DNA of 64,000 nt. Source: Diadema antillarum (lineage: Eukaryota). A model generated the notes under the pieces. That model was not told the origin of the DNA. It worked only from the letters and a program-made list of their open reading frames with translations, and did not search any database. The stretch lies in NCBI RefSeq assembly GCF_040938485.1, contig NW_027271292.1, positions 1,054,001-1,118,000 on the forward strand, written 5' to 3'. The position numbers were made by a program, and so were the translations under genes. This document shows positions 12,838 to 37,276 of the stretch, one piece after another; positions within the stretch are counted from its first letter, which is position 1, and every line of letters begins with the position of its first letter.

Positions 12838-13858
12838 ATGCATGAAACTCAAGATTCAAGACTGTCCATTGATTCATATTTCGAAAACAAGGTTGACATG
12901 TCAGACGGCCAAATGGGCGGACAAAAAACTGTTACATTATTTGAAGAGGCAGAAGATGATAACTTTTCAGCAATGACTGAGCTCACAACCCAGTCTCAGG
13001 TCACCAGCTGGTCGGAATCTTCGAGTCTCTTCTCCTCGGAGGTAGTCATCGCCTTGGCGGTCATCGTTGCTGTCATAGTGTTCATCACCGTCATCGGAAA
13101 CTTGCTGGTCGTCTTATCCTTCATGACGACAAAGAAGCTACGTAATTACAACAACTACTTCATACTAAGCCTGGCCGTGTCTGACCTTGTGGTCGGTGCC
13201 ATCGACATGCCCCTCTTCGCCATCGTATTCATTACCGGGCGATGGCCGTTTGGGGAAGTCTTCTGTGACATCTTCTCCTTCCTCGACCACACTTTCGCCC
13301 ACGTCAGCATCGTGCTCGTAACCATCATCAGTCTGGAACGCTGGGTTGCGGTCTCATTTCCCTTCCACCATCGTCGATACTGGCGGCGTCGCTCGCGTGC
13401 CATGCTGCTCATAGCCATCGGGTACGCCATTCCCGTGCTCATCTGGTTGCCGTCCACCGCGCTATGGCAGTACCTTCGGGGAAACGAACGTCGAGCTATA
13501 CCTGCAGACGTCTGCGAGCCACAGTACCTGGAGAGTGTGGTTTTTAGCTTTTTGTCACCAATACTGTACCTGTTCATTCCCTTCGCCATCACGGCTGTCC
13601 TCTGCACTCGCATTTCTGTCATCATCTGGCAAATCCAAGGACAGAAGGCGAAGACGCAAGGGACGATTAATCATCAAAGAAAGACTGATCGGCAGTTTCA
13701 AAATGGTGCTCCTTCGACATCGAATACTTCATCTTCGCAGGTAATCGAATCCGACGTCGGAACCGATAAGTCACAGAGGCCGAACGAGACAGGCTCTCCG
13801 GATAACATCGACGATGAACAGGAAATCAAACAGAAAACGAGAAAGGACAACTTTAAAG
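12838..13858 (+). CDS. Gene A, muscarinic-like aminergic class A GPCR, coding exon 1 (N-term to ICL3; TM1-TM5)
   Basis: GN1.50; NNYFILSLAVSD2.50; C3.25-x6-D3.32; SLERW; LWQY in TM4; P5.50. The ORF runs past a phase-1 donor AAAG|GTAGGA (GT 13859-60). The start codon is uncertain (12838 or 12898, or an unseen upstream exon). Confidence 0.9.
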
Positions 13859-14599
13859 GTAGGAATGTACAATCATACCATTACATCAACACATACCTAC
13901 GTGCATCTGCACTTAATGATTGCTTAGTATAAGTGCTCCCTCCAATAAGGCTGAGGCCGTTTACATTACACAAAATATGATTAAAATACACAACTGCTGA
14001 ATCTCAACTAAGAGTTTTATGGTGCGTTTATACATATTGAATAATACAAAACCAAATCAAATTACATAGTATGAGAAGGGAAATGTGTTTCTCTATAACT
14101 TTTGTGAAGGAGTCCGGAGAAACACAATATGTATGAGGGAGTAAAAATATCTGACTCGTAATCTTTTGCAGATAACGTCTACTTCCTGCTTGATTTGGTG
14201 TTATCATGGTTACTGGATGATTGACTTGGGGATAAGGCCTATGACTTGAAGGTCGTGTAAGATGTTTGTTGGATGTGTATGATGCAGTAAAACAATCGGA
14301 TAGGGCATATCTAACCTGAGCTCTGACTGCCGACTGATTTATGAAATGTAGATGGGTAAGATTATGATTATTCTCTGTTGAACAGGATGTCAGTAAAGAA
14401 AATAGCGATGGTAGATGAATTCGTCTAATCTCGTTGGTGTTCATGTAACAAAGGAATGTCACACTTGCATGGAGCGATTTCTCACAGCTGATTGATCAGG
14501 TTAAGTTTTTGCAGGGTGTTGAGTTGAGTTGAGTTGAGTTGATTTTATTCATTGGACCATGGTTGCTGTTCATCAGTAAGGCCGTGAAATTAATGATGG

Positions 14600-14990
14600 G
14601 TTACATTTCGTTCCGAATGTTCGTAATTCAGAAAATGAATGAAGGTTGGTTTTGTGATCTTTCGTAAGTAGGAAAGTTCTCCCGCTTCCCCCCTTTTTTT
14701 TTGAATAACTAACCTTATTTCATTTTTGGATCAACGAATCTTATTTCTTACTTGCAGGATATGATTTGTACACTTATATTCTTTGGTGAAAATGAAAATG
14801 AATGAATGAAAATGAAATGAATATTAATACACTGTATGGGTAAATAGAAAAAAAAATACGAACCTTATTTCATTTTCGGAACCACGAACCTTCGGAATAA
14901 CATCCTTCGAAATTATGTCACATTAATGTTCGGATGATGGAATCTTTCGAACATCTTGAACATCTTGGGATGGGGAATTTTATGTTTCGG
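14600..14990. repeat. Interspersed repeat family built on GAACCTTCGGAA/TTCCGAAGGTTC motifs
   Basis: The same motifs recur at ~47640-47790, ~49290-49800 and ~54115-54230. Confidence 0.65.
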
Positions 14991-15860
14991 AATATAGAAC
15001 ATGGCCCTATACAGACAACATATCATGTAACCCCCCCCCCCCCCCCATAAAAAAAAATACAAATACAAATACAAATAGTACCAAAAATACACATTCAATA
15101 TTTCTTTTTCCAATTCAGCTTACTTTATTGATAATCATAAAAGGAGAATATTTACAGGGTAAAATGTGATGCGGAGTTTACGGAGAAAATCATAGCATCA
15201 AGTCAAATGAGTCCCCCTTTGTAGAGTTACATAATTATGTACAAATATAGATTAAGAGTCGAATTTTGAATATTTCATTAAAGTAGCAGATTAATACATC
15301 AACATAAAGAAATATAAGAAACATAAAATTATGCTTCAACACTAAACAAATAAAACAAACAGACAGAACAAATGGATGGACGGATGCAGTTGGTTCATTT
15401 GGTAGGCACTACAATCATGTTTTATATCTAAACTTAAGCACTTTGAGTAGATATATTCTTTTAAAAAAAAAGATGTCTAAATCATTCCAGACCTTAGCAC
15501 TTTTAGGGAAAATAGAATTCTTCTATTTGACGCTCATGCGACAAAAAAGGTAAAACAATATTACGATTGTACAATTTATTCATTACCAAACAGCCTCCGA
15601 AAATATAAGAGTTGCATTCAAATGTTTATGCATAAAGAGACCGTAAGACAAAAACACAATGACAGTGTGAGAGCATTAATAAAAACATCATGGAGCCGTG
15701 TAATCAAGATAATTAGCATTTCAAAAAAAAATCTGAATTGCCTTTTTTTTCTATAGAAGATACAAATGATGAAATTAAATGAGTGGATTCCAGGTCATAC
15801 AAGACTGCAATAATCAAGATGAGGTAATATAAAGAAATGGTATTTAAAGAATAGTAGCAT

Positions 15861-16592
15861 TTAAAGGGTTGGTATATCATTGGTTAATATGGGGATTCAG
15901 GTTTCAACTTTTTGCGAGCTAATTAGAGACCATTTATATGAAATACTAAAGAGCATACAATTCTAAGAGGAATCAAAAGTTCATTTCATTTGACGAAAAT
16001 TATTTTTGAAATGACTGGGATATCCACTAAAAAGTAGAACAAAGTAGTCCTGATAAAAGGTTGGACTCACCTTTTTTAATGAATATGTTCGTTGAATAGG
16101 TCGTGGTTAACATTATGACAATGATTTTTCATCATGTGATGTATCAGAAGCAGTCGTACCATTATTACCATAAATACCTTATCATTATGTCAATGGGATG
16201 GTAAAGTATGGGTGGAGATGAGGATTGGGCTTTTTAACTTTTTGAGAATACCAAGAAACCACTTATGAAATCATACAGAGCGTACCATTCTGAGAGAAAT
16301 TCAAAGTTTATTAGATGAAAATCGGTTTTGGAATGACCGAGAAATCCACAAACAAAGTAAAACAAAGCGATTCTTATAAAAGATGGGTCCAACCTTCAAT
16401 TAGAATTGCTCTGTTTTTTTTATATCTCAGCCGTTTCAATACCAATTTTCGTCAAATAAACAATGAATCCCTTTTAGAATTACATGCTCTTTCATAATTA
16501 TTTCCTAACAGGTTTCTCATTATCTCACACAAAAAAAAAAAAATGTTCGAAACCTAAAGTTAGGTCTCAACCAAAACTATACGATCCCTTTA
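15861..16592. mobile_element. Palindromic TAAAGGG-terminal DNA element (MITE family)
   Basis: Imperfect TIRs TAAAGGGTTGGTATA...TTCAGGTTTC / GAAACCTAAAG...CTATACGATCCCTTTA. Partial copies at ~24779-24900, ~30140-30305 and ~31370-31650; the last has the central palindrome TAATAAAAGGTGG-GAC-CCACCTTTTATTA. Confidence 0.7.
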
Positions 16593-17109
16593 TTGGCAAT
16601 ACGCCGAAGTTGGATCCAAGTGATAATTACCAACGTGATACGTATCACATCGGAAAGTGATATACATTATTCCCTATTTGATTCTGATGATGAGTTTACG
16701 ATCAGCATATTAAAAGGGATTCTCCTTTCTCAAATACCCTTTTCTGAGGCAATAAGAAAGCATTCTGATGATCCATCATATATTTTACTCTCCCTCGTCC
16801 ACATGTGGAAAGAAAAATAAAACATGCTCACTGTACCACACACCACGTCGTTGTAATAGCAAACTATAAAATACCTTAACTTGTAGCACTGTTGTCAAAA
16901 ATATGTATTAAAATCTTGCAAATTGTCAGCATATATTATTGTATCGTTCCGAGAATACCTCGCTTAGTTGTTCCTTTTTTAAATTTTTTTAAATTTTGAA
17001 AACAACATCCTTAATGCACCCCCATCCCAAGAATAACAGCCATACCATAGTATGCATTCGCTTTGAGCATTCTACGCCCAGAGTGAGTTTGGTGTCCTAT
17101 AAGCCGTAT

Positions 17110-17139
17110 AATAATATGATGACGATAATAATGATGATG

Positions 17140-17176
<37 letters not shown>

Positions 17177-17330
17177 TAATTATGATAATAATGATAACAA
17201 CAAAAACAAAAATGGTAATAATAATAATAACTATTATTATTATCATCATTATCGTTATTATTTTTATTATTGTTCTTCTTCTTATTATTATCATTGTTAT
17301 CATCATCACTATCATTATTAATATCTTATT
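17110..17330. repeat. (AAT)n followed by (ATT/ATC)n microsatellite, self-complementary
   Basis: Direct reading; explains the poly-Ile ORFs on both strands. Confidence 0.9.
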
Positions 17331-17362
17331 ACCAGAAAATACTGCGACCCTTTAATTCCCAG

Positions 17363-17478
17363 GTCTGAGAACACTGTCCTTCATCGTATGTGCGATGGTC
17401 ATCTCCTGGGGCCCTTCGGCCGTGACTATCATTATCTCCTCCTTCTGCGCAGACTGCCTACCTGGATTCACGTACTCG
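17363..17478 (+). CDS. Gene A coding exon 2 (TM6-ECL3), 116 nt
   Basis: CCCAG| acceptor and |GTGAG donor. Phase 1 fits exon 1, giving (G)LRTLSFIVCAMVISWGPSAVTIIISSFCADCLPGFTYS with W6.48-x-P6.50 and the ECL3 CxxC. Confidence 0.9.
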
Positions 17479-17950
17479 GTGAGAAAAATTCTGTTCAGTC
17501 TATACGGTTAGAGGGAATTTTCTCACCAGAACATCTTAAACCTTTTTAATAGTTAGTACTATGGTATAATTGAATTGAATTGTAAGACTTAATAATCAGT
17601 GCTCTACTGCACGTGAATAATAAATATTCAAGATGTGTTGAAAGTTACACAATGAGAAATTGAGAAAAGAACAGTAAAATGAAATATCCTTTTATTGAAT
17701 TTTACTGTTCTAAGTTTGTGTGTGTGTTTTCCCCCAAAATGGTTTGTTCTTTTCATTTGTGAATGCCATTTTCTTTCACAATGACCAGTCTTTTTTCACA
17801 ATTCTATGTATTTATCATATCAATTTATGCCTGCATATTAAAAAATATAATAAACTGAAGAGAATGAAAATGATACTTGCTGTAAGTAGGCGATGTCCTC
17901 ATTGCAAACTGAATTTTCTTTCATTTAAACTTGTTTACTTCATCTCTCAG

Positions 17951-18067
17951 GTCACCGTCTTCTGGGGATACATGAACAGCATGCTGAACCCTGTGTGTTA
18001 CGCCCTAGCCGATCAGATCTTCAAGCAATCTTTTATGAGCATCATAACACTGAAGTGCCTTAGATAA
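17951..18067 (+). CDS. Gene A coding exon 3 (TM7-helix 8, stop)
   Basis: TCTCAG| acceptor, phase 0; reads VTVFWGYMNSMLNPVCYALADQIFKQSFMSIITLKCLR*. The spliced CDS from 12838 is 1254 nt = 417 aa. Confidence 0.9.
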   Translation, partial: VTVFWGYMNSMLNPVCYALADQIFKQSFMSIITLKCLR

Positions 18068-19764
18068 GCAACAAGTCACCGGGATTCACATCCACGTGTG
18101 TTTCATTCATTGCAGAACAATCTTACAATCTTATCAATGTAGGTGTCCACTGTCCCGAAGTTGAGCAAAGAAGGACACACCATATAGGAAGTACATATTC
18201 AAAATCGTCTCTTATCATGTAAACATCCGTTTATTAAGGGCACCTTAAAGCCATCGTATAATCGACGGTGGAGTTTCTCATGCTGCTATTGCTTTGACTT
18301 TTGATAGGCTTTTAACCAAATTCGGGGCTAACTTCTGAAAATTTTGAAATTCCATATTCGTATGGCCATCTAGTGTCCGTTTCGGGACAGTGTGAAGTCA
18401 CACTAAACACAATGACGCAGTTTGTGGAATGTAGCCATCAAGAACATCAGTTGTTGCTATGCCCGGCAAGCCTTAAATTATGGCGACGAATTGAAGTCAA
18501 CACGATATCTACGGCAGAGAAATTTGAATAATATACGACGAAAGTAATGTGAGGCTCCCTCCAATTTCCGTCAAAAAATGTCCCCTGGAAGGTGATAACC
18601 AGTAGAAAACCAGCTACTAGAAAAAATGCGTGTTGTTGTTCTGTATTAAAAAGTCTGTTTGATCAACAAATATTCAGAAGAAAACGTTATTTGCCTGAGA
18701 AAGTCATATATGACAAGTATAACGCTGCAAATGATATACAGAATGTATAAACAAAATGGTAATCTGAAAACGGAATCCGATTGATTTCATTCAAACTTCC
18801 AAACTCTAATCGAGCTTGAGGTTCCATTGAATTTTTAAGTAATATAGTAACTAACATTTTTAGATCCACTACATTATCTGACAGAATTATCATCTGCGGA
18901 ATTTTTAGAAGAACAAGAGATAGTTACCATGACGGTGCGCGATATCGACGTACGGCGGGTGTGGCAAAAGAACACACCGCATCATTTCTTCTGCTTGTTT
19001 TTTTTTCTTTTATCTGACTTCGCCAAATTTCACTGCTCTGGCGCTTTACAATCGTGACATAACAGATGGCCTTTAGTGAGTCAGAGAGGTAGATACATGA
19101 TTAAGAGATTCTTAGCATTGGTTGCCTGTCAGTGTAATGAACTCGGATATGATGACAGTTGTGTTAAAAAATAATATGGCTGCTGTCAGCGTTATATGGG
19201 ACATAGAAGGAAAATTATAATCACAAAATATAGGTCTTTTAAGGTATGTAAAATATGTCATTGTAGGACATACGAATATACACGACCTGTATGAGCCCCT
19301 GATGAACTTCCAGCAATGCAACTATAAAGAGAGGTGTTTCTGTAAAAATTCACGTACCTGAACACGGTGACAGGACAATTGCCAACACAAACACACACCT
19401 GAAAAGTCGTGGTAATATCACAGTGTCACAGCCAGCTTAATCATAGATCATTTGTCACAGATTGCCTGCATGCCATTTGTCATTACTCTGCAATGTATAA
19501 CACCCACGTGCGCACTATTAGCGTCATTACCTTGGAGAGAGCTTGAGAAGAACGTAGAACGTAGAACGTGAAGAACGTGACCGAGACATGACAAGCGGTA
19601 TTCGTGCTCTTGACACGAGCTAAATTAGTGTTTGATTTATGTTCTCTTCGCTGACAGTCATTTAAAAAGGTTTTAGAGTAGTCGAGGTTGATACCACTCT
19701 TTGTAATGTCAACCGTATTATTCCGACCTTCTTTGTCGACTGTGCTCAAAAAGCATTAATATAC

Positions 19765-22126: not shown

Positions 22127-22284
22127 ANNNNNNNNNNNNNNNNNNNNNNNNNNNNNNNNNNNNNNNNNNNNNNNNNNNNNNNNNNNNNNNNNNNNNNNNN
22201 NNNNNNNNNNNNNNNNNNNNNNNNNNNNNNNNNNNNNNNNNNNNNNNNNNNNNNNNNNNNNNNNNNNNNNNNNNNNNNNNNNNN
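22127..22284. other. Assembly gap (N run); other gaps at ~25683-25821, 34696-34910, 52714-52850, 54879-55011, 55672-55812
   Basis: Runs of n in the sequence. Confidence 0.98.
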
Positions 22285-23032: not shown

Positions 23033-23040
23033 ATGGAAAG
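23033..23040 (+). CDS. Gene B predicted initiator micro-exon coding part (ATG GAA AG)
   Basis: AAA-ATGGAAAG|GTGAGT is a consensus donor. Phase 2 joins the CTAG|G acceptor at 23575 to give MERIVTTVF.... The large exon has no in-frame ATG before TM1 and has an in-frame TAA at 23555. Confidence 0.7.
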
Positions 23041-23574
23041 GTGAGTGCATATCATAGATTGCTTTATGATTCGTTGATGCTGAGTTACATTACATTATCA
23101 AATTAGTCAGATTATAGTATGTGGCGCGACATATTCTTAGCAGGTCTTCATAATTGTAAACTAGAACAAAAAATAAATAAATAATGCTTGAGCAGAAGAA
23201 ATGTAGTAATGAAGTAATGGAGTAATGGGACACGATTTAGTTTGGTTGATGTTGAGTATCACACTACATCGTAACATATCTCGGAAGAGCGAGGGACATC
23301 ATCATTATCAAGAGAATTGCACGGTAAATGAAAGTAAGAATAAAAGCAGTGTAAGAAGTCGAAACTGTTCTCGGAATCTGATATCAATCTTGTGAACTAC
23401 GCATCATTATTTTTAGTACAAAACCGCAAATGTAGATCAAGAAAAGGGCAAGACACATGCTCATGTGCAAAAATAGCTACAAAAGTGTAATTTAGTTATC
23501 GTGATGAAAACAAAAATGAGGAATTCATACTTACCAACAAATACAAGAAATATCTAATCATTATCAATATCTAG

Positions 23575-24515
23575 GATAGTGACAACTGTATTCCAGTTGG
23601 ACGTGAACTTTGTCGAGGAGGTGACGAAAGTAGCTGAGGAAGAAAGTATTTCCTCCAAAGATTTCGGTGCAGACAGGTTTCCTGATGATCAATTCGTGTT
23701 TGACAACGAGACGACAGGACCCCAAGATTCCAATCCATATTCCAAGGAACTTGTGATCGTTTTATCCATCGCCATCAGTATGATCATCTTCCTGACTATC
23801 ACAGGAAACTTTCTCGTCATCATGTCGTTTTTCGTCTCCAAGAAATTACAAACTTACAATAATTACTTCATCTTGAGTCTGGCCTTGTCCGACCTGGCTG
23901 TCGGAGCGGTGAACATGCCGCTCTTCGCCATAGCACTCGTGACGGGTAAATGGTCAATGGGACAGGTTTTCTGTGACATCTTCACCTTCCTCGATCACGC
24001 CCTCTCCCACGTAAGCGTCGTTCTCGTCACAATCATCAGCATGGACCGCTGTGTTGCCCTGTCATTTCCCTTCCGACATCTTAAATACTGGCGACGTCGT
24101 TCTCGAGCTCTCCTTCTCATCGTCATCGGCTACCTGATCCCAGTCGTGATCTGGCTGCCATCGACAGCCCTCTGGCAGTACGTCTACGGCAGCGACCTCC
24201 CCTCAGCTTCCATCGACACGTGCGAGCCTCGGTACCTGCAGAGCATCGTCTTCAGTTTCATGGCACCGATTCTTTTCCTCTTTATTCCCTTTGTCATGAC
24301 AACCATCTTCAGCTTGAGGATCGTCGTCATCATCAGAAGTTTTCACGAAAGAAAAGTACGACGGACGATGAGATTCAACAAGCCCACAGAAGTAGATGAC
24401 TCCGTTACCGACCAGGCGACGAGGACAGGCTCAATGGTTGTCCGTAAGAATGGATTGAAAGCCGAGGGGGGAGAAAACATCGACAAGCGGCAGATGGACA
24501 AAAATGGAACGAAAG
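23575..24515 (+). CDS. Gene B, muscarinic-like aminergic GPCR, main exon (TM1-TM5, ICL3)
   Basis: Paralogue of gene A (NNYFILSLALSD, CDIFTFLDH, SMDRC, LWQY). Phase-1 donor AAAG|GTATGT at 24516. Confidence 0.9.
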
Positions 24516-26179
24516 GTATGTCCAGTCTAGCGACTTGTTTCGATTTTACAATCTTACTGGGCTTTGGATAATTATAATGAGAATACTACTACTGTTACAA
24601 TAACGATACTCTTTTTGTTTTCAATAGCTGTAACGCCATACACTGTCTACGCTCGTCAATCATAAAATGAAAACACGTTAGTTTAAATATCATTTACAAT
24701 TCACGCAATGGTTACACTGAGAATGGGAAGTGACTGAGTAGGTACTGTATTTCAGGCGCTTCAGGCAATCGAGATTTTAAAGGGATTGCGTAGTTTTTGT
24801 AAAAATGGGGATTCAGGTTTTAACTTTTTTACAACATAATTAGAAACCACCTAGTTCTATATGAAATATAAAAGAGCATGCAATTCTAAGATGAACATTA
24901 CAATTTCTAAAGTGACATCTTCCATACGCAGAGCACGTTTTGAAAAAGCACTGATCTGAGCGCATAGACAGGTATAGGGCTTATACACGCAAAGTCTAGT
25001 TCATGAGCCCAAAGCTGCGCAGTAATATCTCGGGAAGTAAAAGTAACTCATTAAAATGAAAAGGTAGGTCGTACACTTGGAGTAGATGCAGAAATTTTAC
25101 ATTTCTGTACACATTTTACATAGGTACCTTTTGAGTTGAAAATTAGCTGTTTTTCACCTTAGGATTCAGTACTCCGCAAGAGACACACATTTTTGCGCGT
25201 TATATGAACGGCGCGGTGCGCGCGAACAGGCAGGGAGAGGTCCCATCAGATGACCTACTTCGAGAGGTAAAAGAACCATTATTCCTGTCGCACAATCAAA
25301 AAGTAACTCCTTAAAATGAATAATCATATTCTAATGAATATTCATGTAAAATATCTAGCCAATTGGAAAAACTTTCCCATAGGTACCTCTGCAATATTCA
25401 TATTCCATAGCTGCTGACAGAATCTGCCTCTGATACACTCTATTCAACGCGTGCCGCACTTTAGGATACCGCATCCTGATTGGCTAAAAGGTTTTCGGGC
25501 AATCGGTCACCGCGTGATCATTTCATTAATATTCATCACTACTCACGCCACTGGATCGCTGTGATTGGCTTCATGTAAATAAGAACCTCAGATTCAAAAA
25601 TAATGATCTCGCTGCATCGGATACAGTGTATGTACTTTGTGACCTCCTGCGCTGGCGTGCTCTGCATCTCCTGCCTTCTATANNNNNNNNNNNNNNNNNN
25701 NNNNNNNNNNNNNNNNNNNNNNNNNNNNNNNNNNNNNNNNNNNNNNNNNNNNNNNNNNNNNNNNNNNNNNNNNNNNNNNNNNNNNNNNNNNNNNNNNNNN
25801 NNNNNNNNNNNNNNNNNNNNNTCCATGGCACTACTACTACTACTACTCGTACTACTACTCGTACTAGTAGAGTATGGCAAAATCAAAATACATGCCCATT
25901 GGATATTAAAGACAGCTCGCACAGCTAGAAAAGTACGTCAGTAATATAAAAGCTATCAATTTGATTATTATAAAATTGACACTTAATCATTTGGATTAGA
26001 TTTTTGTGTACGGCTATGAATAAAATTCTAACTATTAATCAATTTTCAATGTCGTTGAGTGGCTGAATTGCATAATGTACAGTACTTGTATGTCACTGAG
26101 CTCTGCACTGTCGTAATTACTTTTTGATTCCGTTGGGTTCGATCCCCCCCCCCACTCACACACACACACACACAAATAA

Positions 26180-26210
<31 letters not shown>

Positions 26211-28071: not shown

Positions 28072-28677
28072 CTAGGCTACTATATTGCTGATACACGCAA
28101 GTGCATTCCAAGACTCATCTGAGATGCCATGAGCATCCTTTACTAGCACGGCGAGATTTACCCTTTGTAAAATATCCTCTTCATTACATCCTGTCATGCT
28201 ACACAACTCCTCTGTATCTTCAATCAGAGAAATAGCCTTCAGTTCTTCACTGTTTTTGTCTCGTACAGTGATATGTATGACAAGAACTCCCTACGAATCA
28301 AGAAGTTGTAACCTGGCCCGACACTCTTCTTTGAGATGCATTGAGAGTCTCCTGGCATGTCTCCTTGAGTAATGTTCTTTTCTCATCCATGCTGATCGCT
28401 TGCCTGATTGTCTATTTCTCAGTAACATAGAGAGATGCAGAGCACGTTTTTTGTACTTTTTCCTGATCAATTCAAAGCGTTCATTCTTTTTCAAAACTTT
28501 TTCAAGCTTCTGTTTTATGTATGCCAACTTCTCAATTTTTCTTTTAAGTTTCTTTATGGTATCAAGCAGACTTTTTTTGCGGACATTCTGATTGCAAAAT
28601 TTTAAGCTGCCATGTCTTTGTCTTTTTAAGCCCCTTACTGAACAGAGCTCGCTGCTTCCCTCCTCGTCGTGACTGCT
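28072..28677 (-). pseudogene. Decayed transposase-like reading frame (possibly Transib/RAG1/Chapaev-like, N-terminal of the catalytic core)
   Basis: One frame with a single internal TAG (28293-91): ...DTIKKLKRKIEKLAYIKQK...HYSRRHARRLSMHLKEECRARLQLLDS*GVLVIHITVRDKNSEELK...LQRVNLAVLVKDAHGISDESWNALACISNI. The family assignment is from motif memory only. Confidence 0.45.
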
Positions 28678-29013
28678 TTATTCGAGTAATAGGTCTGATT
28701 AGATACGATTTTATTGCATTCAGTAGACGAGGAGTTGAAGACATATTCATAGAATAATGTTGGCATATAGAAAAAAACACAATGTTTGAAACCTGATGTG
28801 GACCCTTATGCATAATTATGTAACTTTGTAACTTCAGTAACAAAAGCCAAATCTACATTTAAAAAAAAAAGTATGCCATAGTTCATGAATGAATCAAACT
28901 GCATAAAAAATATGGAACTGACGTTTGAGTGTAAAATGTCTAAATAACTTTGAATTTAAGAAACTGTAAAACTCCTAAACAACCCTGAAACAAAAAGTTG
29001 TTGTGTCTTGACT

Positions 29014-29462
29014 TCATTTCTGCTGTTTCCACTCTTCTCGAGTTCCATACGACCTTATGAACCTCAACATAAGATAGTGCCCTCTCTCCAGATGATGTCC
29101 TGGCAGGGTACCACTACGTTCCACAAATTCGGTAATTGGTCTCATTTTCCTAACCTTTAGGTAAAGCCCCTTTTCTTTCACGTATGCGAAATCCCCTGCC
29201 ATATTGGTTATTCTTACGTTCCAGTCGGGTCCTAGGATGGCATTCAGCTCATTCATTTAATAGGTTACGGTCTTGAGTATTTTTGCAAGGTGCAAATACT
29301 TCCTCGAACACCAGTGGATCTACAGGGACACGTGCCACGCACTCCGGATTCTGGTTTATGCTGATTGTAAGCTTTTCCTTTATGGCAAGCCTGAGCGCAG
29401 TATTGACATCACTTGCTGTTCCGCAGCTGCCTGAAAAATCCTCTTTGGTGATGAGATCCGCC
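29014..29462 (-). pseudogene. Frameshifted protein-like exon, probably a second gene of the same transposon
   Basis: TTTCAG| acceptor at ~29463, then ADLITKEDFSGSCG...PLVFEEVFAPCK, a frameshift near 29256, then NELNAILGPDWNVRITNMAGDFAYVKEKGLYLKVRKMRPITEF...*. Confidence 0.45.
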
Positions 29463-30468
29463 TGAAATTAAAAAACAAGTTCATACAATCTCTCTGTAAA
29501 TCAAAGATGATGATACTACATAGGTACCCATCATTTATTAGAGAAGTGGTAAGTATACACACAAAGGATATGTAGGTAGAAAGGAATTATGCACAATGAA
29601 TGTATAATTGAATTATAACAATGGCTTTATCCCTTCGGCAGTGTAATGTTAAACACGGATTACATGTTAAATAGGAATATACGTTTTCCTGTTCAATTTC
29701 GTATTAGTGCATGAAAGAGTATAGATCTAGAGAGTCATTCAATTTCGATAGGGCAACAAAATAATGGGCATTCAGTTTCACATGAGTAGAGCAATCAAAA
29801 GAGTAAAAACGTTATTTAGATTCCATATACCACAGGGCATTCAAGTAAGCACGAAAAGACACGCGACTGAAGATTCCTGGTAGATTATATGAATTATGTT
29901 ACACAATTCAAGAACAAGCATCTTTTCCAATTATACACGTGTACATGTGGATTCCTGGTGACGTGCAATACTGCATATTAACAAAATCTCATTTTATTGT
30001 GTTACTTGTTCACCTTCACATTATATACAATGTGTGACAAATTTTCAAACATTTTTGTCAATCATATCATTTCCTCAAATCTAAGCTTCACCCTAAAAAA
30101 ATAATAAAAAATAAGAGTAACATCGCTCTGCTTTAAGCCTTTAGATATCTCGACTCAGCCATTTCAAAACCAATTTTCATCAAATAAATGTTGAATTCCT
30201 CATGGAATTCCATGCTCTTTCATGTTTCTCATTGGTATCTCACAAAAAATGTTAGCGTTAGAAACCTGAAATTAGGTCTCAACCAAAACTATAGGAGCCC
30301 TTTAAGGTTGGTGCTGTGAGCATGTTTTTTATTGTTAGACTAGACGTCTAGAGTGTTACTGTTACGGTACACAGTTTACTTTTTTTTAGTGTTACTGTTA
30401 GTGACGGTTTGATGAATGCACAAATAGTTTTGACCTTTAAGTTTAGGTTTAATCTCCTCTATTAATAA

Positions 30469-30641
30469 CAGTGGCGGATCCAGAGGGGGGCGCAACCGGC
30501 GCACGTACGCCCCCCCCCCCCTTAAATTTTCGTTAAAAACAAAGAAAATAAAAAGAAAATACTGCAATGAAACCCGGAAGTGGCACCAAAAATATTAGTC
30601 ACGCCCCCCCCCCCTTTACAGAATTCCTGGATCCGCCCCTG
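30469..30641. mobile_element. GC-rich MITE with CAG(T/G)GGCGGATCCAG TIR and 5-bp TSD (AATAA)
   Basis: The 15-bp TIR matches 14/15; AATAA lies at 30464-68 and 30642-46. Confidence 0.85.
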
Positions 30642-33600
30642 AATAATACACTAGTTTGATTCGTTACAGGTTCTATTCTACATCGGCGCTAACAGTTAGG
30701 CCTACATGAGACAATGCTTAAACATGCTTCAAAATATTAGAATGATGTTTAGTAGAGTTTAACGTTTAGGCCTGTTGTTAGAGTTTAACGTTTGTCGTTA
30801 GGCCTACCTCGACATCAAAGGCTGACTTTTTGTTCCACTGCTGGCACTGCAGTTGTCTTCTCCTGGGTCTCCGCGAGTTTTTTGAAATGTCCGATGGAAT
30901 ATGAAGCACATCTTCTCCTTGGTCTTTGGGTTGGGTGTTCACTCATTGGTTCCAGAATGAAGTAGCCTAGTACTAGTAGAATAGAGTACTCGTTGAATTT
31001 GTCCAAATATGAAATAAGTTCTAACAGTATTATCGTGTTGCATGCATAGAGGCTCTACGTATACTGAGTAACTAAGCTAGCTAAGCTCAGACCCTTATAC
31101 TAGTAGTGCATGCATTATACAGCTGCGCGTATCGCATGCTGGTATTTCGCGGAGCGCGACCACGCTAGCCAGTCGTCCAGCACTAGCTCGTGATTGGCTA
31201 ATATCTTTGACCTGTGTTTGTATGTAAATGAGGTCAACGCGTGATCAATTAATGAATATTCATTATACACTATCAGCAACGGGTTTCAATTGGTTGTATG
31301 TTAATGGAAATATGACATCATACCTCATTAAGAGTTTGTCCGCCGACGCGTGTAGACTTTTTGTAATGATTCAAAGTTTATTTAATGAATATCGGTTTTG
31401 AAATGGCTGAGATATAAAAAAAGGAAAACAAAGAGGTCCTAATAAAAGGTGGGACCCACCTTTTATTAGGACATCTTTATCCGTGGATATCTCAGCCATT
31501 TCAAACCCAATTGCGCTTAGCAATTAATTACGCTTATAATTGTATGTTCTTTAATATTTCATGTACACTGTAAGAAATTTCTAATTATGTCATAAAAAGT
31601 TGAAACCTGAATCCCAATCTAAACCAGAACTATACCATCCCAAGTCACCAACATCCTGTAGGTGAGAAATTCCACAGACCTGTTTAAATTACTATGCTCC
31701 AGAAATATTAAAGTTATAACACGAACTGGAACTAATAGTTGTTTTTTTTTGTGGGGTTTTTGTGTGTGTGTGTTTTTGTTTTGTTTTGTTTGTGTTTTTT
31801 TTTTTTTTGGGGGGGGGGGGTATGGAGGATTTGTGTGTTTGTTTGCCTTTTTGGTTTCTTTCTTTCTTTGTTTGTTTGTTTGCTTTGGTCGGCCCAGAAT
31901 AAGCTATAAATAACTTGCCATGTGAATGCCGTTGCACACGAAGTACAAAAAGGAAGGCAAGGAAAGCATTGTATCCGATTTAAAATAGACTGACTATGTC
32001 TCATACTTAGCTCAGATCCATTCATATTCACTTTACAGAGTGAGTTTTGTTGGGCTAGATATTATACACATATATGTATATGGTGAAACTTTAATCAGTA
32101 AGTATGATAAACTTTTAATTGATATAACTTATTGTCTGTTTTTGTTGATCAACGGCTCACTTTGCAACGACCTTGCGATGGTACAATTTGCGTGATGATA
32201 CAATTTGTATAAAGAAACCTTTGCAATGACCACTGCCCTTGTTATGGGCGATATGATTATGATGATTATTTGTACGCATATCTGATGATTTTGTATTTTA
32301 AAATGATTGTCTGCTGAAAGAATTTTGCGTCATACCGAGAAGAAATATAATTCTGGATAATTTTGGCAACTCATACGCACATGTAAGTCTTCAGTATCTT
32401 CTTCGATTCCACAAACAGTGTTTTGCTCAGACAAGCATAACTTATAACAAATATGAGCACATGACTGGCAGGTGGTTTGTCACGAAAGTGGACCCGTATA
32501 TTGTAATGATATTCAATCAAATCTCTCTGCTGAAACAAAATGCAATTTCTCAGTTTGGACGTCATGGATGTGTTTTCTTCTTATGCCTTTAATGGCGCAT
32601 TTTTCCTTCCTCCTACCTTACTTTTGTCTAAACTTTCCTTCTCCTCTTCCTCCTGTCGAAATATTTGGATTACGTCTCCGTGAACTCTCTCTCTCTCTCT
32701 CTCTCTCCCTCTTAAATAATTCCTTGATTCAGCAGAACAGCATTATCACCGTATCTTCCTTTTCCTTTTATTCTTAGTGTCACTTTTTCTGCCTATATCT
32801 CAAGTACACTCTCCCTTTCCAGTTCTTTGTTTTATGGCAGTGAACACAGTCACTTTGTTTACCTCTTCTTAGTCCTCCCCTTTGCATGGACTAGAACAAA
32901 AAAAAAATCACCTTTTCAATCATAATTAAACCAGCAAATACATATACGGTCAAATATTTTCATTGTACGGAACATGAATCAACAAAAGTTCTGTGTTTGA
33001 CAAGGTTCTGAATTTGATTTTGGCATGTCAACCCGGTTTGATCATGAACGTAATTTGATTTTGTTGTACCGCGTAATTTTACATGCACAATTGCAACGCG
33101 TGATAGATACAGGTGATTTCTTGAGCTTTTAGTGTTTTCGTCTGGAGATATCTGTCGGGAAATATTTTACCTCGATAACATCTCTCGGTATCTTTGATAA
33201 TGCCATTAGCTTAGAGGAACATGAACCTGCAGGTTTCATCAGCTTAATCACATGAAAATGTGCTTAACCACAAAGTGAAGTAAAGATTTCCATCATAAAA
33301 TATAGATAGTATTCATGAATTTGATGAGTTGGTTGCTTTACCCAGGGCTGATATGACGCAATGGGTTAACTAAAAATAATCAATCAGCTGGTATCAGAGG
33401 TCTTTAGAGAGAGAGAGAGAGAGCACACTAATGTACTCAAGTCTCAAATATTAATTTGTTGGAGAACAATAATCCTGATCGGTCACCCTATTTGCTACCG
33501 GACGAAGGGAGAATAACTCGATTGATAGAGATAGTGGGACTGCCGTTCATTGTGAAGATGATTAAACAAACGACCTCTTTTCACCCATAGGGTAGTGTTC

Positions 33601-33707
33601 TACAAGAAAGACAAAAAAATACACCATTTTACTCGTGTGTAGATAAGGCTTTTGTCTTCATGCTCTTCGTTCTTTTGTGTCTGTTTTTTTCCCGGATCCG
33701 TTCACAG

Positions 33708-33823
33708 GGCTGAGAACTCTAGCCTTCATCATAGGTGCTATGGCGATAGCCTGGGTGCCTTCCGTCATGACGGTGATTACCTCAACATTCTGCGCCACCT
33801 GTCTGCCAGGATTCGTTTACACG
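33708..33823 (+). CDS. Gene B exon (TM6-ECL3), 116 nt
   Basis: TTCACAG| acceptor and |GTAATA donor; reads (G)LRTLAFIIGAMAIAWVPSVMTVITSTFCATCLPGFVYT. Same length and phases as gene A exon 2. Confidence 0.9.
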
Positions 33824-35525
33824 GTAATAATAATAATAACAACGATAATAATAATAGTAATAATTGCATTTATGTGGCGCTTTATACATATTCGATTACG
33901 CGAATTTGCAAACATGTGACCCTTTTATTTCATTTCATTTCATTTTATTCATTTCATTTCATTCATTTCGGTAGGGCAAATGATTATTAAAGCTAACAAG
34001 GGTATTCTTCTTCACGTCAGCTCCTTAATGTGTAGAAATACTTTATTTCTTTGTACCCTTTTCTCGTTCGTTCGTTCGTATTTATTTTGCTTCACAAATC
34101 AAATCAAATCAAATCAAATCAAAAATCAAATCAAATCAAATCAAATCAAATCAAAATGAATTGCACGGGTGTGATAATCTTAAACAAAACATAACCAAAA
34201 TAATGACAAAGGAGCAATACAAAAGTGCAAAACTACATAGGCCTATATAACAAAAAAAAATCTTTGTAAAACATTTATACTTGCATAGAGAAGGCATATG
34301 ATGGCTGATGGCCTCATTGGGAATATAACTCAGATTTGCCTCTCACGAAAAGTAATTTATTTGTTTCTATTGCAATATTACGCTTTAGAGGGAAAAAGGA
34401 AGATGTGATTGAATGCTGTACGTGTGCAGTTATATAGGTGCGTTAAATGCGTCTTTTGATTAGATCCTATACCCAATGCTGCAGTGCCAGCTGGTCACTG
34501 TGCCCCTGATATGCCTGTAGGGGCTCTCATCCTTGTTCTAGTTGATTTTGATAATAAATTCAGTGATTTCAAACAAAGAGAACGTTATACGTTTTATGAA
34601 CTTTAGGGTATAGTAGCAGTCAGAGATTAGATGACAAGGCAATCGCTTCCAAAAACTCTCTCTAGCCTGCAAAAACATCTTCCTTAACAGATGTGNNNNN
34701 NNNNNNNNNNNNNNNNNNNNNNNNNNNNNNNNNNNNNNNNNNNNNNNNNNNNNNNNNNNNNNNNNNNNNNNNNNNNNNNNNNNNNNNNNNNNNNNNNNNN
34801 NNNNNNNNNNNNNNNNNNNNNNNNNNNNNNNNNNNNNNNNNNNNNNNNNNNNNNNNNNNNNNNNNNNNNNNNNNNNNNNNNNNNNNNNNNNNNNNNNNNN
34901 NNNNNNNNNNCGTCCAAAGTCCCTGGCACTGAAAGGCTTAAAAGAAATCATCCTAGTAACATACAGATCCAATTGACGCCAAATAAACATTAGTCTAAGC
35001 TCCATAATGATTAACATTTCCCATCCATATATGCACGAGCCAAATAAAAAAGTATGTAATTACACAGAAAAAAAACATCTTCATTAAAATGCTCTTATGT
35101 AACTTTTATCAGCTCGTTCATAAACCAATCGATATTTGTAAAATAAGGGAAATAAAGAAGGAATGAAATCGATATTCAATGATAGGAAGAGGACTGATCT
35201 TGATTCACTCATAATGTTAACTAGATAACATCAAACGAAATATTGATAATCGTGTTCATAATGAAATAAAACTGATCCTTAACAATCACACAATCGTAAG
35301 CAGGAACAGTAAAGTCTCGCTGTGTTTACAGGCTTTTCTTTTTTTTTCTTTTACAATCTTTGTAATTAATTAACTCACCCTCAATGCCTCGTTGAAACAT
35401 GTGATTCTTTGCTTTTGTATTTGTTTTGTTTGTTGTTTTTTGCCAAAGTCTAAGTCGCATTTTCATTTTAAAATGGGAAGGGTGGGTGCGTCATTGACAT
35501 TATCTTTACACACATAACATGCATA

Positions 35526-35567
<42 letters not shown>

Positions 35568-37153
35568 AAAAAGTTCTGAGGTGTTTAACACTGTAATGCT
35601 GTATGTAATTTCTGGAACTAGATATTTTGACCTTTAACTTCTGCAACAGATCAACAAAGTCTGATTTATTTGTGTCAACAACAAAATTTATGCAAACTGC
35701 ACATCTCAATTTCCTTTAATGTATATAGTTTGTTGGATCGAGGGACTCGAGGCCATTATTTTTCTTTTAGATGTGGCTTTAAGATTCATTACACTTTCTT
35801 ATTGCATCTTATTTTAGGTACTGAAACGGAAAAAGCAACAACCGCTTCAAACCTAGCTGTAGAATTTTATATAGTACTGTTTTATGAATGCTGTTCGTAA
35901 ACGACGAAAAAAAAAAGAGAGAGCAGTCTTCTTCAGTATAGCTAAAAAAGTTGTAAAGTATTTGAATTCTTTTTAACTAATAGCAGCATTTTACGATTAT
36001 GTCTGAATCATATCTAGAGCATCTGCCAATCAAAAGAAACGATGCGACAGAGCAGAAGTATAATGTAAAGACATAATTTAGTTCTACCATTAAAGTCATA
36101 TTTTCACAATGCATCTACGAGAGAGGATGTGTATTGTACACTAGAGAGATTTCATCGATCTCCTCCTACATATGTTTTCGTATTTAATCTTACCTGCTTT
36201 CTCAGGGACTCTCATATTTCTGAAAAAAAAATCAATACTATTACACTAAAGAAAATTCTCTGAGAGCGGAAGATTGCCTTGATTCAAAGTAGAGGAGATC
36301 CAATTGAGTGATAAGTGCACAATCGATATTAAGTCGAAAGATGGGACAAAAGGTCACTCCAGCGAAATCTTCGTCGACTCTTCTGCACTCTTCAAACTTG
36401 TTTACATCATGGATATGTCTCAGATACATCAAGACCAGCAGATATGAAGATTTTCATGCACCTTTGGTTAACATTTAGTGCCGTCAATTGAATTCATGGA
36501 ATTGATAAAAACTTAAAAATCAGAAATATATAGCTATTGATTGGGAGAGAGAAAGATTGTTTACGAGTCTGTTTGCCGTTTCAAATGACGTTGCGTTCCA
36601 TTTTGACGTTTGGATTATTACTTGTAATTTTCCTAGTCATAAAATAGCAACATAATACCAGATCATCTCTTAACCTTACGGGAGACCTTGCTAATAAGAC
36701 TGTAAAATGAATCTGAGATTTGTAGTCAAGTTCTTACGAACAATATCACTTCATATGATCTTAGCCATTTTCGCTTCAAGAAGGTGAACGAAAATGTCTT
36801 GTGAAACATGAAATGATTGATGGACGAAAAAAGTAGGTTATAGCCAGATCCGTTTTAATCTTGCAAAAAGAACAGGATGTACACAGAGCTAAAAATTGCT
36901 AGCCTATGATAACATAGCGCTAGCAATTGCATTTAATGTACTTTATTTTATGTACTTTATTTAATGTAGATGATAAACATATATACATAATTTTCCTACA
37001 GATTTGCACCATTTTCTTTTTTTAATTGATATTGAAGAAATGAAATTTAACTTTAGGCTGGGAGGTATACATGTATTCTTATGAGTATCGTATTTTATAA
37101 TGTACTTATGACTATCGTATCTTACAATGTCTTCGGTTTTTCTTTCTTTGCAG

Positions 37154-37276
37154 CTCGTGATATTCTGGGGCTACATGAACAGCATGACGAATCCACTTTG
37201 CTACGCCTTGGCGGATAAAGCCTTTAAAGAGGCATTCATCCAAATTCTATCTTGCAAGCATTTCCTCCAGCGCTAG
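37154..37276 (+). CDS. Gene B last exon (TM7-helix 8, stop); absent from the ORF track
   Basis: TTTGCAG| acceptor; reads LVIFWGYMNSMTNPLCYALADKAFKEAFIQILSCKHFLQR*. The spliced CDS is 1188 nt = 395 aa. Confidence 0.9.
   Translation, partial: LVIFWGYMNSMTNPLCYALADKAFKEAFIQILSCKHFLQR

What the first reader, a model, noticed from the sequence alone, without database searches (positions are those of the whole stretch)
12838..37276. Muscarinic-scaffold receptor pair with a rewired ligand pocket: tyrosine lid lost, two TM3 histidines gained
Seen: both spliced proteins carry muscarinic hallmarks (NNYF.LSLA.SD in TM2, LWQY..G at the end of TM4, FCxxC(L)P in ECL3, NPxCYAL in TM7). They also keep D3.32, Y7.43, W6.48 and the sodium-pocket residues D2.50/S3.39/N7.45/N7.49, so they look functional. 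Counting from C3.25, P6.50 and P7.50, both paralogues have Y3.33->H, N3.37->H, Y6.51->S, N6.52->A/V and Y7.39->V/I. Established: Y3.33/Y6.51/Y7.39 form the aromatic cage for the acetylcholine quaternary ammonium, and N6.52 is an invariant orthosteric contact in M1-M5. Inference: this is an orphan muscarinic-derived subfamily that binds a different amine or metabolite. The D-H-x3-H face could also confer Zn2+ or pH sensitivity.
Basis: partly seen in the sequence, partly recalled or inferred. Interest (0 to 1): 0.75.

Follow-up and report, generated by a model that had tools for sequence, protein, structure and literature searches.

The report
Sea urchin muscarinic-like orphan receptor pair
Two neighbouring, intact sea urchin (Diadema antillarum) receptor genes look most like acetylcholine (muscarinic) receptors but have lost most residues that hold acetylcholine and carry two conserved histidines instead; they belong to a receptor family seen so far only in echinoderms, whose ligand is unknown and which databases label "muscarinic".

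Summary
The window is Diadema antillarum. It carries two tandem + strand class A GPCR genes with identical intron positions: gene 1 at 12838-18067, gene 2 at 23033-37276. All three assembly gaps lie in an intron or between the genes. Both proteins keep D2.50, D3.32, S3.39, W6.48, Y7.43, N7.45 and NPxxY. Both have H3.33, H3.37, S6.51, A/V6.52 and V/I7.39.

Both are under purifying selection against Diadema setosum (dN/dS 0.21-0.24). Solved muscarinic receptors are the best sequence and fold matches.

The interpretation needs three corrections:
- The pair belongs to a monophyletic family (29 rows, 100/100) whose named members are all echinoderms. H3.33 is invariant and H3.37 nearly so.
- "Muscarinic-derived" is unresolved. 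The best tree puts the family outside the A-type and B-type muscarinic clades, but AU tests do not reject alternatives.
- H3.33 also occurs in B-type muscarinic-like receptors, and W6.51 is ancestral in the family. Echinoderms also have a separate receptor clade with the tyrosine lid intact, the likelier acetylcholine receptor.

Ligand, metal or pH sensitivity and expression remain untested; no RNA run was listed. Two earlier follow-ups in this scan report related Asp3.32-less arrays elsewhere in this genome.

The parts
12838..13858 (+). Gene 1, exon with N-terminus, TM1-TM5 and most of ICL3. Start codon is 12838 or, in the NCBI model, 12973. Donor AAAG|GTAGGA, phase 1.
   Evidence: ORF and Pfam 7tm_1 hit, E 5e-38. 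Identical to P0001 residues 1-296. Splice site.
13285..13302 (+). Gene 1 TM3 codons D3.32-H3.33-T-F-A-H3.37
17363..17478 (+). Gene 1 exon with TM6 and ECL3 (W6.48-G-P-S6.51-A6.52; FCADCLPG). Acceptor CCCAG|GT, donor TCG|GTGAGA.
17951..18067 (+). Gene 1 last exon with TM7 and helix 8 (V7.39-F-W-G-Y7.43, NPVCY), stop TAA
22128..22284 (.). Assembly gap between gene 1 (ends 18067) and gene 2 (first coding base 23033); not in any exon
   Evidence: gene models
23033..23040 (+). Gene 2 first coding mini-exon ATGGAAAG followed by donor GTGAGT; it supplies Met-Glu and two bases of Arg
   Evidence: The only exact match in the window. Fits the acceptor TCTAG|G at 23573-23574 and the D. setosum protein start MERIVTT.
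23575..24515 (+). Gene 2 exon with N-terminus, TM1-TM5 and ICL3; donor AAAG|GTATGT, phase 1
   Evidence: (7tm_1 E 4e-33)
23993..24010 (+). Gene 2 TM3 codons D3.32-H3.33-A-L-S-H3.37
25683..25821 (.). Assembly gap inside the gene 2 intron 24516-33707
33708..33823 (+). Gene 2 exon with TM6 and ECL3 (W6.48-V-P-S6.51-V6.52; FCATCLPG), 116 nt as in gene 1
   Evidence: 95.7% identical to D. setosum L004:14750-14865
34696..34910 (.). Assembly gap inside the gene 2 intron 33824-37153
37154..37276 (+). Gene 2 last exon with TM7 and helix 8 (I7.39-F-W-G-Y7.43, NPLCY), stop TAG
   Evidence: 98.4% identical to D. setosum L004:17900-18022

Best explanation
[quoted passage not shown] They belong to a family seen so far only in echinoderms and related to muscarinic, histamine H1 and histamine H3 receptors.

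The activation machinery is kept: the sodium pocket D2.50/S3.39/N7.45/N7.49, (E/D)R at 3.49-3.50, P5.50, W6.48-x-P6.50 and NPxxY. The amine anchor D3.32 with its partner Y7.43 is also kept. Inference: they are activated by a small cationic (amine-type) ligand that salt-bridges to D3.32.

That ligand is probably not acetylcholine. Two of the three lid tyrosines are replaced by non-aromatic residues (S6.51, V/I7.39) and the third by histidine (H3.33); N6.52 and most TM5 contacts are also replaced. The family-defining histidines at 3.33 and 3.37 lie one helical turn apart, on the TM3 face that in amine receptors meets the ligand's polar head group. They would supply new hydrogen-bond, aromatic or metal-binding contacts.

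Whether the ligand is an internal transmitter or an external chemical cue (a role like that of trace-amine-associated receptors) is open.
For: Shown:
- Complete frames, canonical splice sites and the same gene structure in both copies.
- Purifying selection against D. setosum. Gene 2: 391 codons, dS 0.110, dN 0.026, omega 0.24. Gene 1 (partial): 231 codons, omega 0.21. Fisher p below 1e-6 for both. Nearly all changes fall in the N-terminus and ICL3.
- Pfam 7tm_1 hit.
- Confident 7TM model, pLDDT 86.7, pTM 0.82.
- Best fold matches are M5, M4 and M3 with TM-score 0.88-0.92 normalised to target length.
- Best sequence matches among solved structures are M1-M5, for the single exon (E 9e-39 against 2e-26 for H3) and for the family profile (247-301 bits against H1 216-248 and H3 202-212).
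- Retained and replaced pocket residues are tabulated.
- H3.33 is invariant and H3.37 nearly invariant in a 14-sequence family alignment, on a par with class A hallmark residues.
- The family is monophyletic (100/100) and every named member is an echinoderm: Echinoidea, Asteroidea, Ophiuroidea.
- Echinoderms have a separate clade with the lid intact (D3.32, Y/F3.33, Y6.51, Y7.39, C7.42, Y7.43) that can serve as their acetylcholine receptor.

Inferred: the nature of the ligand and the role of the histidines.
Against: - No ligand, coupling or expression data exist. No RNA run was listed for the locus, so transcription of the spliced forms is not shown here.
- Other aromatics (F7.40, W7.41, Y7.35, Y or F at 5.46, the conserved ECL2 Tyr, and W6.51 in sister genes) might rebuild a cation cage. 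Acetylcholine or another quaternary amine is therefore not excluded.
- Receptors carrying the B-type pocket pattern include more than 20 with H3.33, and B-type receptors still respond to acetylcholine.
- Sister lineages of the same family have N or S at 3.32. The family as a whole is not tied to amines, and D3.32 could be a structural holdover.
Confidence: 0.55

Rival explanations
1. They are still cholinergic. The echinoderm family consists of divergent acetylcholine (or choline-ester) receptors whose cation cage is built from other aromatic residues, as arthropod B-type receptors differ from A-type.
For: - Muscarinic receptors are the closest solved relatives by sequence, profile and fold.
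- D3.32, W4.57, W6.48 and Y7.43 are kept.
- H3.33 occurs in more than 20 representatives with the B-type pocket pattern. B-type receptors respond to acetylcholine although insensitive to atropine (PMC7203735).
- Muscarinic-type pharmacology is reported for echinoderm muscle (PMC10603993).
- The AU test does not reject a clade with deuterostome A-type receptors (p 0.117).
Against: - Both window genes lack Y6.51, N6.52 and Y7.39. Those residues are present in all 71 canonical A-type sequences examined, and Y6.51 and Y7.39 are present in nearly all B-type ones.
- Only 4-6 of 17 A-type pocket positions are kept.
- Echinoderms possess a separate lid-intact clade that fits the cholinergic role better.
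Confidence: 0.15
2. They are metal-ion or proton sensors, or metal-dependent receptors. The His i/i+4 pair on TM3, next to D3.32, binds Zn2+ or Cu2+ or titrates near neutral pH, and this gates the receptor alone or together with a ligand.
For: - H3.33 and H3.37 are spaced i, i+4 on a confidently modelled helix.
- That spacing is the classical bidentate metal site on an alpha helix and has been engineered into GPCRs (established knowledge, not tested here).
- The pair is as conserved as class A hallmark residues across the family.
Against: - The evidence is purely geometric.
- The pair lies deep in the membrane-embedded pocket, not on the extracellular surface where known proton-sensing and Zn2+-sensing GPCRs place their histidines (from memory).
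- The pair is also kept in family members that lack D3.32.
- No coordinates could be measured with the tools available.
Confidence: 0.1
3. They recognise a non-amine ligand (a lipid, purine, peptide or other metabolite) or signal constitutively, and D3.32 is a structural holdover.
For: - Sister lineages of the family replace D3.32 by N or S, W6.48 by S or G and Y7.43 by H or W, yet persist.
- Earlier scan notes report whole arrays of Asp3.32-less relatives in this genome.
- DRY is altered to ERW in gene 1 and DRC in gene 2, and F6.44 is M.
Against: D3.32 and Y7.43 are kept together in every complete group I sequence from urchins and sea stars (two exceptions: the brittle-star protein P0168 has C7.43, and the S. 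purpuratus model P0003, whose TM7 looks mis-predicted), which implies selection on the pair. The sodium pocket and NPxxY argue for regulated rather than constitutive activation.
Confidence: 0.15
4. They are annotation or assembly artefacts, or decaying genes: exons stitched across gaps, or unexpressed relics.
For: - Three assembly gaps lie within the span.
- No RNA run was listed.
- Gene 2 has no ATG in its large exon.
Against: - No exon touches a gap.
- The same exons in the same order occur in the gap-free D. setosum locus.
- An exact ATG mini-exon with a consensus donor restores the gene 2 start.
- Omega is 0.21-0.24 with no stop codon in either species.
- tblastn finds only these two exon sets in the window.
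Confidence: 0.03

Closest known systems
A-type muscarinic acetylcholine receptors (vertebrate M1-M5, invertebrate mAChR-A)
   Same: - Best sequence, profile and fold match.
- Shared motifs: TM2 NNYF.LSLA.(A/S)DL, TM4 LWQ(Y/F), the ECL3 C-x-x-C pair and NP.CYAL.
- Shared residues: D3.32, W4.57, W6.48, Y7.43 and the sodium pocket.
   Different: - Y3.33 becomes H, N3.37 becomes H, Y6.51 becomes S, N6.52 becomes A/V, Y7.39 becomes V/I and C7.42 becomes G.
- W3.28 becomes F.
- TM5 T5.39/T5.42/A5.43/A5.46 becomes S/(S,A)/P/(Y,F).
- ICL3 is short.
- There are two introns (before TM6 and before TM7).
- The ML tree places the family outside the 100/97 A-type clade.
B-type muscarinic receptors (arthropod mAChR-B, GAR-1/2-like)
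   Same: Both depart from the A-type pocket. Many representatives with the B-type pattern also carry H3.33.
   Different: B-type receptors keep Y/W6.51, H6.52, Y7.39 and C7.42, and have C3.36 and L3.37. They form a separate clade (100/99).
Ambulacrarian lid-intact muscarinic-like clade (Saccoglossus P0232, D. setosum P0288, Amphiura P0291, Holothuria P0293)
   Same: Found in the same phylum and the same superfamily. A sister relation is not rejected (AU p 0.149).
   Different: - It keeps Y/F3.33, Y6.51, Y7.39, W/Y7.40, C7.42 and Y7.43, and has C3.36, A3.37 and S6.52.
- One member is encoded without introns.
Histamine H3/H4 receptors
   Same: Next-best solved relatives after the muscarinic and H1 receptors. 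One L. pictus family fragment is even labelled 'H3-like'.
   Different: No E5.46, no Y3.33, no Y6.51 and no W7.43. An amphioxus H3-like sequence does not group with the family.
Trace-amine-associated receptors (an analogy of evolutionary pattern, not homology)
   Same: A lineage-restricted radiation from an amine-receptor scaffold, arranged partly in tandem. Some members keep D3.32 and others have lost it, and pocket positions vary between paralogues.
   Different: A different parent lineage. A chemosensory role for the echinoderm family is unproven.

Membership tests
Class A (rhodopsin-like) GPCR | 7tm_1 profile match and seven-helix fold | tested here: met
   Pfam PF00001, E 5e-38 and 4e-33. 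AF2 model pLDDT 86.7 with seven TM helices plus helix 8. Foldseek hits are all GPCRs.
Class A (rhodopsin-like) GPCR | Activation microswitches: D2.50, R3.50, P5.50, W6.48-x-P6.50, NPxxY | tested here: met
   All present in both genes. DRY is ERW (gene 1) and DRC (gene 2), and F6.44 is M.
Aminergic-type receptor | D3.32 counter-ion with Y7.43 partner | tested here: met
   Present in both genes; the pair is kept in every complete group I sequence from urchins and sea stars, but the brittle-star P0168 has C7.43 and the S. purpuratus model P0003 has an aberrant TM7.
A-type muscarinic acetylcholine receptor | Tyrosine lid Y3.33, Y6.51, Y7.39 | tested here: not met
   H, S and V/I in the two genes. 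All 71 canonical sequences examined have Y, Y, Y.
A-type muscarinic acetylcholine receptor | N6.52 and the other orthosteric contacts (S3.36, N3.37, T5.39, T5.42, A5.43, A5.46, C7.42) | tested here: not met
   A/V6.52, H3.37, P5.43, G7.42. Only gene 2 has S3.36. Four to six of 17 positions are kept.
A-type muscarinic acetylcholine receptor | Placement inside the A-type clade | tested here: inconclusive
   The ML tree puts the family outside the 100/97 A-type clade. A forced clade with deuterostome A-type receptors costs 17 lnL, AU p 0.117, not rejected.
A-type muscarinic acetylcholine receptor | Activation by acetylcholine or muscarine, block by atropine or QNB | not testable with these tools
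   Needs heterologous expression.
B-type muscarinic acetylcholine receptor | C3.36/L3.37, Y(W)6.51, H6.52, Y7.39 and clade membership | tested here: not met
   None of these residues is present. The B-type clade (100/99) excludes the family.
Histamine H3/H4 receptor | E5.46 with Y3.33, Y6.51, W7.43 | tested here: not met
   Y/F5.46, H3.33, S6.51, Y7.43. No grouping with the amphioxus H3-like sequence.
Echinoderm His3.33/His3.37 receptor family (delimited here) | Clade membership plus H3.33, H3.37, F3.28, P5.43 and the ECL2 C-x-P-x-Y motif | tested here: met
   29-row clade at 100/100. Residues. ECL2 motif read.
Helical bis-histidine metal site | Two His spaced i, i+4 on one helix face, with measurable metal binding | not testable with these tools
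   The spacing is present. No coordinates or binding data are available.

The most novel reading that the evidence does not exclude
The invariant TM3 histidine pair, buried in the orthosteric pocket beside D3.32, is a native metal-ion or proton site. These echinoderm receptors would then be gated by, or need, Zn2+/Cu2+ or pH together with a small ligand. That mode is known from engineered GPCRs but not as the defining feature of a natural amine-type receptor family. A remoter variant is that a family member is the long-sought receptor for an echinoderm-specific small messenger such as 1-methyladenine.
Probability: 0.1. Interest if true: 0.8.

Novelty: new variant of a known kind. Interest (0 to 1): 0.5.

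Why it matters
- Sea urchin and sea star genomes list many "muscarinic M1/M2/M3/M5-like" genes, and expression surveys count them as cholinergic receptors (for example PMC12467107).
- At least five such genes in D. antillarum belong to a family, so far found only in echinoderms, that lacks the acetylcholine cage. A different clade with the lid intact is the likelier acetylcholine receptor.
- Separating the two changes how echinoderm cholinergic signalling should be read.
- It also defines a conserved, testable set of orphan receptors with an unusual D-H-x3-H pocket for ligand screening.

Tried and rejected
- RNA evidence: the look-up of sequencing runs listed no RNA holder for 12700-18200, so read laying could not be used and expression is untested.
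- The supplement of PMC12467107 gives only names such as 'M1-AChR', without accessions, so it cannot be tied to these genes.
- Literature searches found no paper that describes this family or its histidines. The 1-methyladenine receptor lead produced nothing relevant.
- AU tests did not resolve the deep placement.
- I considered that the TM7 motif F-W-G-Y hides a one-residue deletion that would put an aromatic residue at 7.39. The ungapped alignment to M2 and to the family does not support this, but a helix register shift cannot be excluded without coordinates.
- The structure tool returns no coordinates, so pocket distances (His-His, His-Asp) could not be measured.
- dN/dS between the two paralogues was not attempted because synonymous sites are saturated at about 50% protein identity.
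- P0167, a possible echinoderm lid-intact receptor, turned out to come from Tara Oceans metagenome contigs of unknown animal origin.
- The three downstream GPCR genes are unrelated to this family.


Full report
**What is there**

The window is from the sea urchin Diadema antillarum. The first large ORF is 100% identical to a database protein, P0001 (372 aa), named 'muscarinic acetylcholine receptor M1-like [Diadema antillarum]'.

Two class A GPCR genes lie head to tail on the + strand.
- Gene 1 has three coding exons: 12838 (NCBI uses the ATG at 12973)-13858, 17363-17478 and 17951-18067.
- Gene 2 has its large exon at 23575-24515, then 33708-33823 and 37154-37276.
- The large exon of gene 2 has no ATG. 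It opens with a splice acceptor (TCTAG|G).
- The only exact copy of ATGGAAAG|GT in the window lies 534 bases upstream, at 23033-23042, and has a consensus donor GTGAGT.
- That mini-exon gives Met-Glu-Arg, exactly the start of the D. setosum orthologue (MERIVTT).
- All five introns are GT..AG.
- The intron before TM6 (phase 1, after Lys-Gly) and the intron before TM7 (phase 0) sit at the same positions in both genes. The TM6 exon is 116 nt in both. This fits a tandem duplication.
- tblastn with three family proteins finds only these two exon sets in the window.

**The gaps**

- The three runs of N are at 22128-22284 (between the genes), 25683-25821 and 34696-34910 (inside gene 2 introns).
- The nearest exon edge is 749, 1168 and 873 bases away respectively, so no frame crosses a gap.
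- Continuity across the gaps cannot be known from the window. I did not look up or fill the missing letters.
- As an independent check of exon order, I fetched the gap-free orthologous locus of another species, D. setosum (L004).
- It holds the gene 1 exons and the gene 2 mini-exon, large exon, TM6 exon and TM7 exon in the same order and orientation.
- Nucleotide identity there is 91-98% without indels in the coding exons; the 61-base stretch around the gene 2 mini-exon is 88% identical with one gap.

**The observation**

- Alignment of exon 1 to solved M5 and M4 places D-H-T-F-A-H opposite D-Y-V-A-S-N, which gives H at 3.33 and 3.37.
- An ungapped alignment of the TM6 and TM7 exons with a ray M2 and with family members gives S6.51, A (gene 1) or V (gene 2) at 6.52, and V or I at 7.39.
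- TM7 reads F7.40-W7.41-G7.42-Y7.43.
- D2.50, D3.32, S3.39, W4.57, P5.50, W6.48, P6.50, Y7.43, N7.45, N7.49, P7.50 and Y7.53 are kept.
- DRY is ERW in gene 1 and DRC in gene 2. F6.44 is M in both.
- Of 17 positions that line the A-type muscarinic site (list from memory of the M2 and M3 structures), gene 1 keeps 4 and gene 2 keeps 6.

**Are the genes alive?**

Exon-by-exon Nei-Gojobori counts against D. setosum were summed without joining sequences.

| Gene | Codons | dS | dN | omega |
|---|---|---|---|---|
| Gene 2 | 391 | 0.110 | 0.026 | 0.24 |
| Gene 1 (part inside L004) | 231 | 0.18 | 0.039 | 0.21 |

- Both differ from neutrality at p below 1e-6.
- There are no stop codons in either species.
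- Changes cluster in the N-terminus and ICL3. The TM6 and TM7 exons of gene 2 differ by one residue in 78.
- Expression could not be tested, because no RNA run was listed.

**What family?**

A full HMMER scan of 1.84 billion representatives with P0001 shows a score gap. The self-hit scores 831 bits, a small set scores 333-232 bits, and a continuum starts at about 216 bits. I mapped pocket positions on about 400 retrieved proteins.

| Group | Pocket pattern (3.32, 3.33, 3.36, 3.37 / 6.48, 6.51, 6.52 / 7.39-7.43) |
|---|---|
| Canonical A-type receptors | D-Y-S-N / W-Y-N / Y-W-L-C-Y |
| B-type receptors | D-(Y/H/W)-C-L / W-(Y/W)-H / Y-(W/F)-L-C-Y |
| Amphioxus H3-like receptor | D-Y-G-S / W-Y-T / F-W-M-L-W, with E5.46 |

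- H3.37 occurs in one set only. Every named member of that set is an echinoderm:
  - urchins: Diadema, Strongylocentrotus, Lytechinus;
  - sea stars: Patiria, Acanthaster, Asterias;
  - a brittle star: Amphiura.
- D. antillarum has at least five such genes: the two here, P0129, P0272 and P0275.
- IQ-TREE (LG+C20 PMSF; 65 and 78 rows; TM cores with ICL3 removed; gene 2 represented by its large exon only) recovers the set as one clade of 29 rows at 100/100, with a stem of 0.6.
- Inside the clade, group I keeps D3.32. It includes the window pair, its camarodont orthologues, a long-ICL3 echinoid paralogue group, sea star orthologues and a divergent 'M2-like' group.
- Group II, from sea stars plus unnamed contigs, has N or S at 3.32, S or G at 6.48 and often H or W at 7.43.
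- Across a 14-sequence family alignment, H3.33 is invariant and H3.37 is at least 90% conserved, on a par with N1.50, D2.50, R3.50 and P6.50.
- Other family marks are F3.28 (W elsewhere), P5.43 and an ECL2 C-x-P-x-Y motif.
- W6.51 is the common state in the family. S or A at 6.51 is confined to the echinoid subclade that contains the window genes.

**Relation to muscarinic receptors**

- Solved M1-M5 are the best matches for exon 1 (E 9e-39 to 1e-27, against H3 at 2e-26).
- They are also the best matches for the family profile (247-301 bits, against H1 at 216-248, H3 at 202-212 and 5-HT1 at about 196).
- They are the best matches for the AlphaFold model as well (pLDDT 86.7, pTM 0.82; top hits M5, M4 and M3, with H3 at rank 22).
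- In the tree the family lies outside three well-supported clades:
  - the A-type clade (100/97: vertebrates, tunicates, a mollusc, a spider, a rotifer);
  - the B-type clade (100/99);
  - an ambulacrarian clade (100/98).
- The deep branches are unresolved.
- Forcing the family together with deuterostome A-type receptors costs 17 lnL (AU p 0.117). Forcing it together with the ambulacrarian clade costs 10.6 lnL (p 0.149). Neither is rejected.
- 'Muscarinic-like' is therefore safe. 'Muscarinic-derived' is possible but unproven.

**A lid-intact receptor exists in echinoderms**

- A search with the hemichordate P0232 found orthologues in D. setosum (P0288), Amphiura (P0291) and Holothuria (P0293).
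- These have D3.32, Y/F3.33, C3.36, A3.37, W6.48, Y6.51, S6.52, Y7.39, C7.42 and Y7.43.
- This clade is the better candidate for the muscarinic-type pharmacology reported in echinoderm muscle (PMC10603993).
- That lowers the chance that the His-His family is the echinoderm acetylcholine receptor.
- H3.33 by itself is weak evidence against acetylcholine. More than 20 representatives with the B-type pattern carry it, and B-type receptors respond to acetylcholine (Collin et al. 2013, as cited in PMC7203735).

**Mechanism**

- Shown: intact, selected receptors with complete activation switches and a retained Asp3.32/Tyr7.43 pair, and a pocket whose acetylcholine-specific residues are replaced.
- Inferred: they bind a cationic small molecule other than acetylcholine. 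The two histidines lie one turn apart on the TM3 face towards TM4 and TM5, where amine receptors meet the ligand's polar head group (established for positions 3.33 and 3.37 in amine receptors). They would form part of the new recognition surface.
- The small residues at 6.51 and 6.52 and the aliphatic residue at 7.39 would open the TM6/TM7 side of the pocket.
- Whether the role is neural or endocrine, or chemosensory in the manner of trace-amine-associated receptors, cannot be decided without expression data.
- The Zn2+/pH idea rests on geometry only.

**Link to earlier scan notes**

Two earlier follow-ups on other pieces of this genome (s1-224569 and s1-225694) describe six- and seven-gene arrays of muscarinic-like receptors without Asp3.32. 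They call these part of an echinoderm-wide orphan group. My tree independently shows Asp3.32-less lineages inside the same clade. I did not have those windows' sequences, so I could not test whether the arrays belong to it.

Gene 2 was handled exon by exon by reference. Full-length work used the stored gene 1 protein P0001.

**Verdict**

This is a real and well-conserved feature. It is a new variant of a known kind: an amine-type class A GPCR family, seen so far only in echinoderms, with a histidine-lined pocket, mislabelled as muscarinic. Interest is moderate.

Noticed in passing
window 41647-43002 (-), 50455-51774 (+), 62222-63463 (+): Three intronless paralogous class A GPCR genes (413-451 aa) lie downstream of the pair. 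They are only distantly like solved peptide and opioid/CCK receptors (about 74 bits) and are unrelated to the muscarinic-like family (29% identity over TM1-TM3 only). D. setosum has a matching gene at the same relative place.
   Followed up: partly
L004:10001-18022 (D. setosum): The public D. setosum protein for the gene 2 orthologue (P0005, 317 aa) stops after the large exon. Its TM6 and TM7 exons exist unannotated at L004:14750-14865 and 17900-18022, so the deposited model is truncated. No D. antillarum gene 2 protein appeared in the two protein searches that could have found it.
   Followed up: yes
proteins P0007, P0017, P0019, P0020, P0029, P0036, P0050, P0078 and others (sharks and rays): Cartilaginous fishes carry many 'M2-like' paralogues nested inside the vertebrate M2 clade with altered pockets: H3.33, N or G at 3.36, V or F at 6.52, and sometimes N7.39. 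This looks like an independent radiation of muscarinic-derived receptors with non-canonical binding sites.
   Followed up: partly
proteins P0003, P0004 (S. purpuratus): The S. purpuratus orthologue model P0003 has an aberrant TM7 (D at 7.43 and 7.45), which looks like a mis-predicted last exon. P0004 runs from ICL3 into an unrelated tail (not analysed further).
   Followed up: no
proteins P0135, P0198, P0230, P0268/P0277, P0115, P0136, P0140 (sea stars and unnamed contigs): A sister lineage of the family keeps H3.33 and H3.37 but has N or S at 3.32, S or G at 6.48 and H or W at 7.43. Several short contigs read through after ECL3, at the position of the pre-TM7 intron seen in the window genes. 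This suggests that the intron is shared family-wide while the pre-TM6 intron is not.
   Followed up: partly
window 16996-17355 and 33824-33900: AT-rich trinucleotide repeats (reading as runs of Ile, Asn or Thr) flank the TM6 exon in both genes: just upstream of it in gene 1 and starting at its donor in gene 2.
   Followed up: no
window 46001-48000: The highest G+C content in the window (0.48) with overlapping ORFs on both strands (46115-46570 +, 46637-46975 -). Not examined.
   Followed up: no
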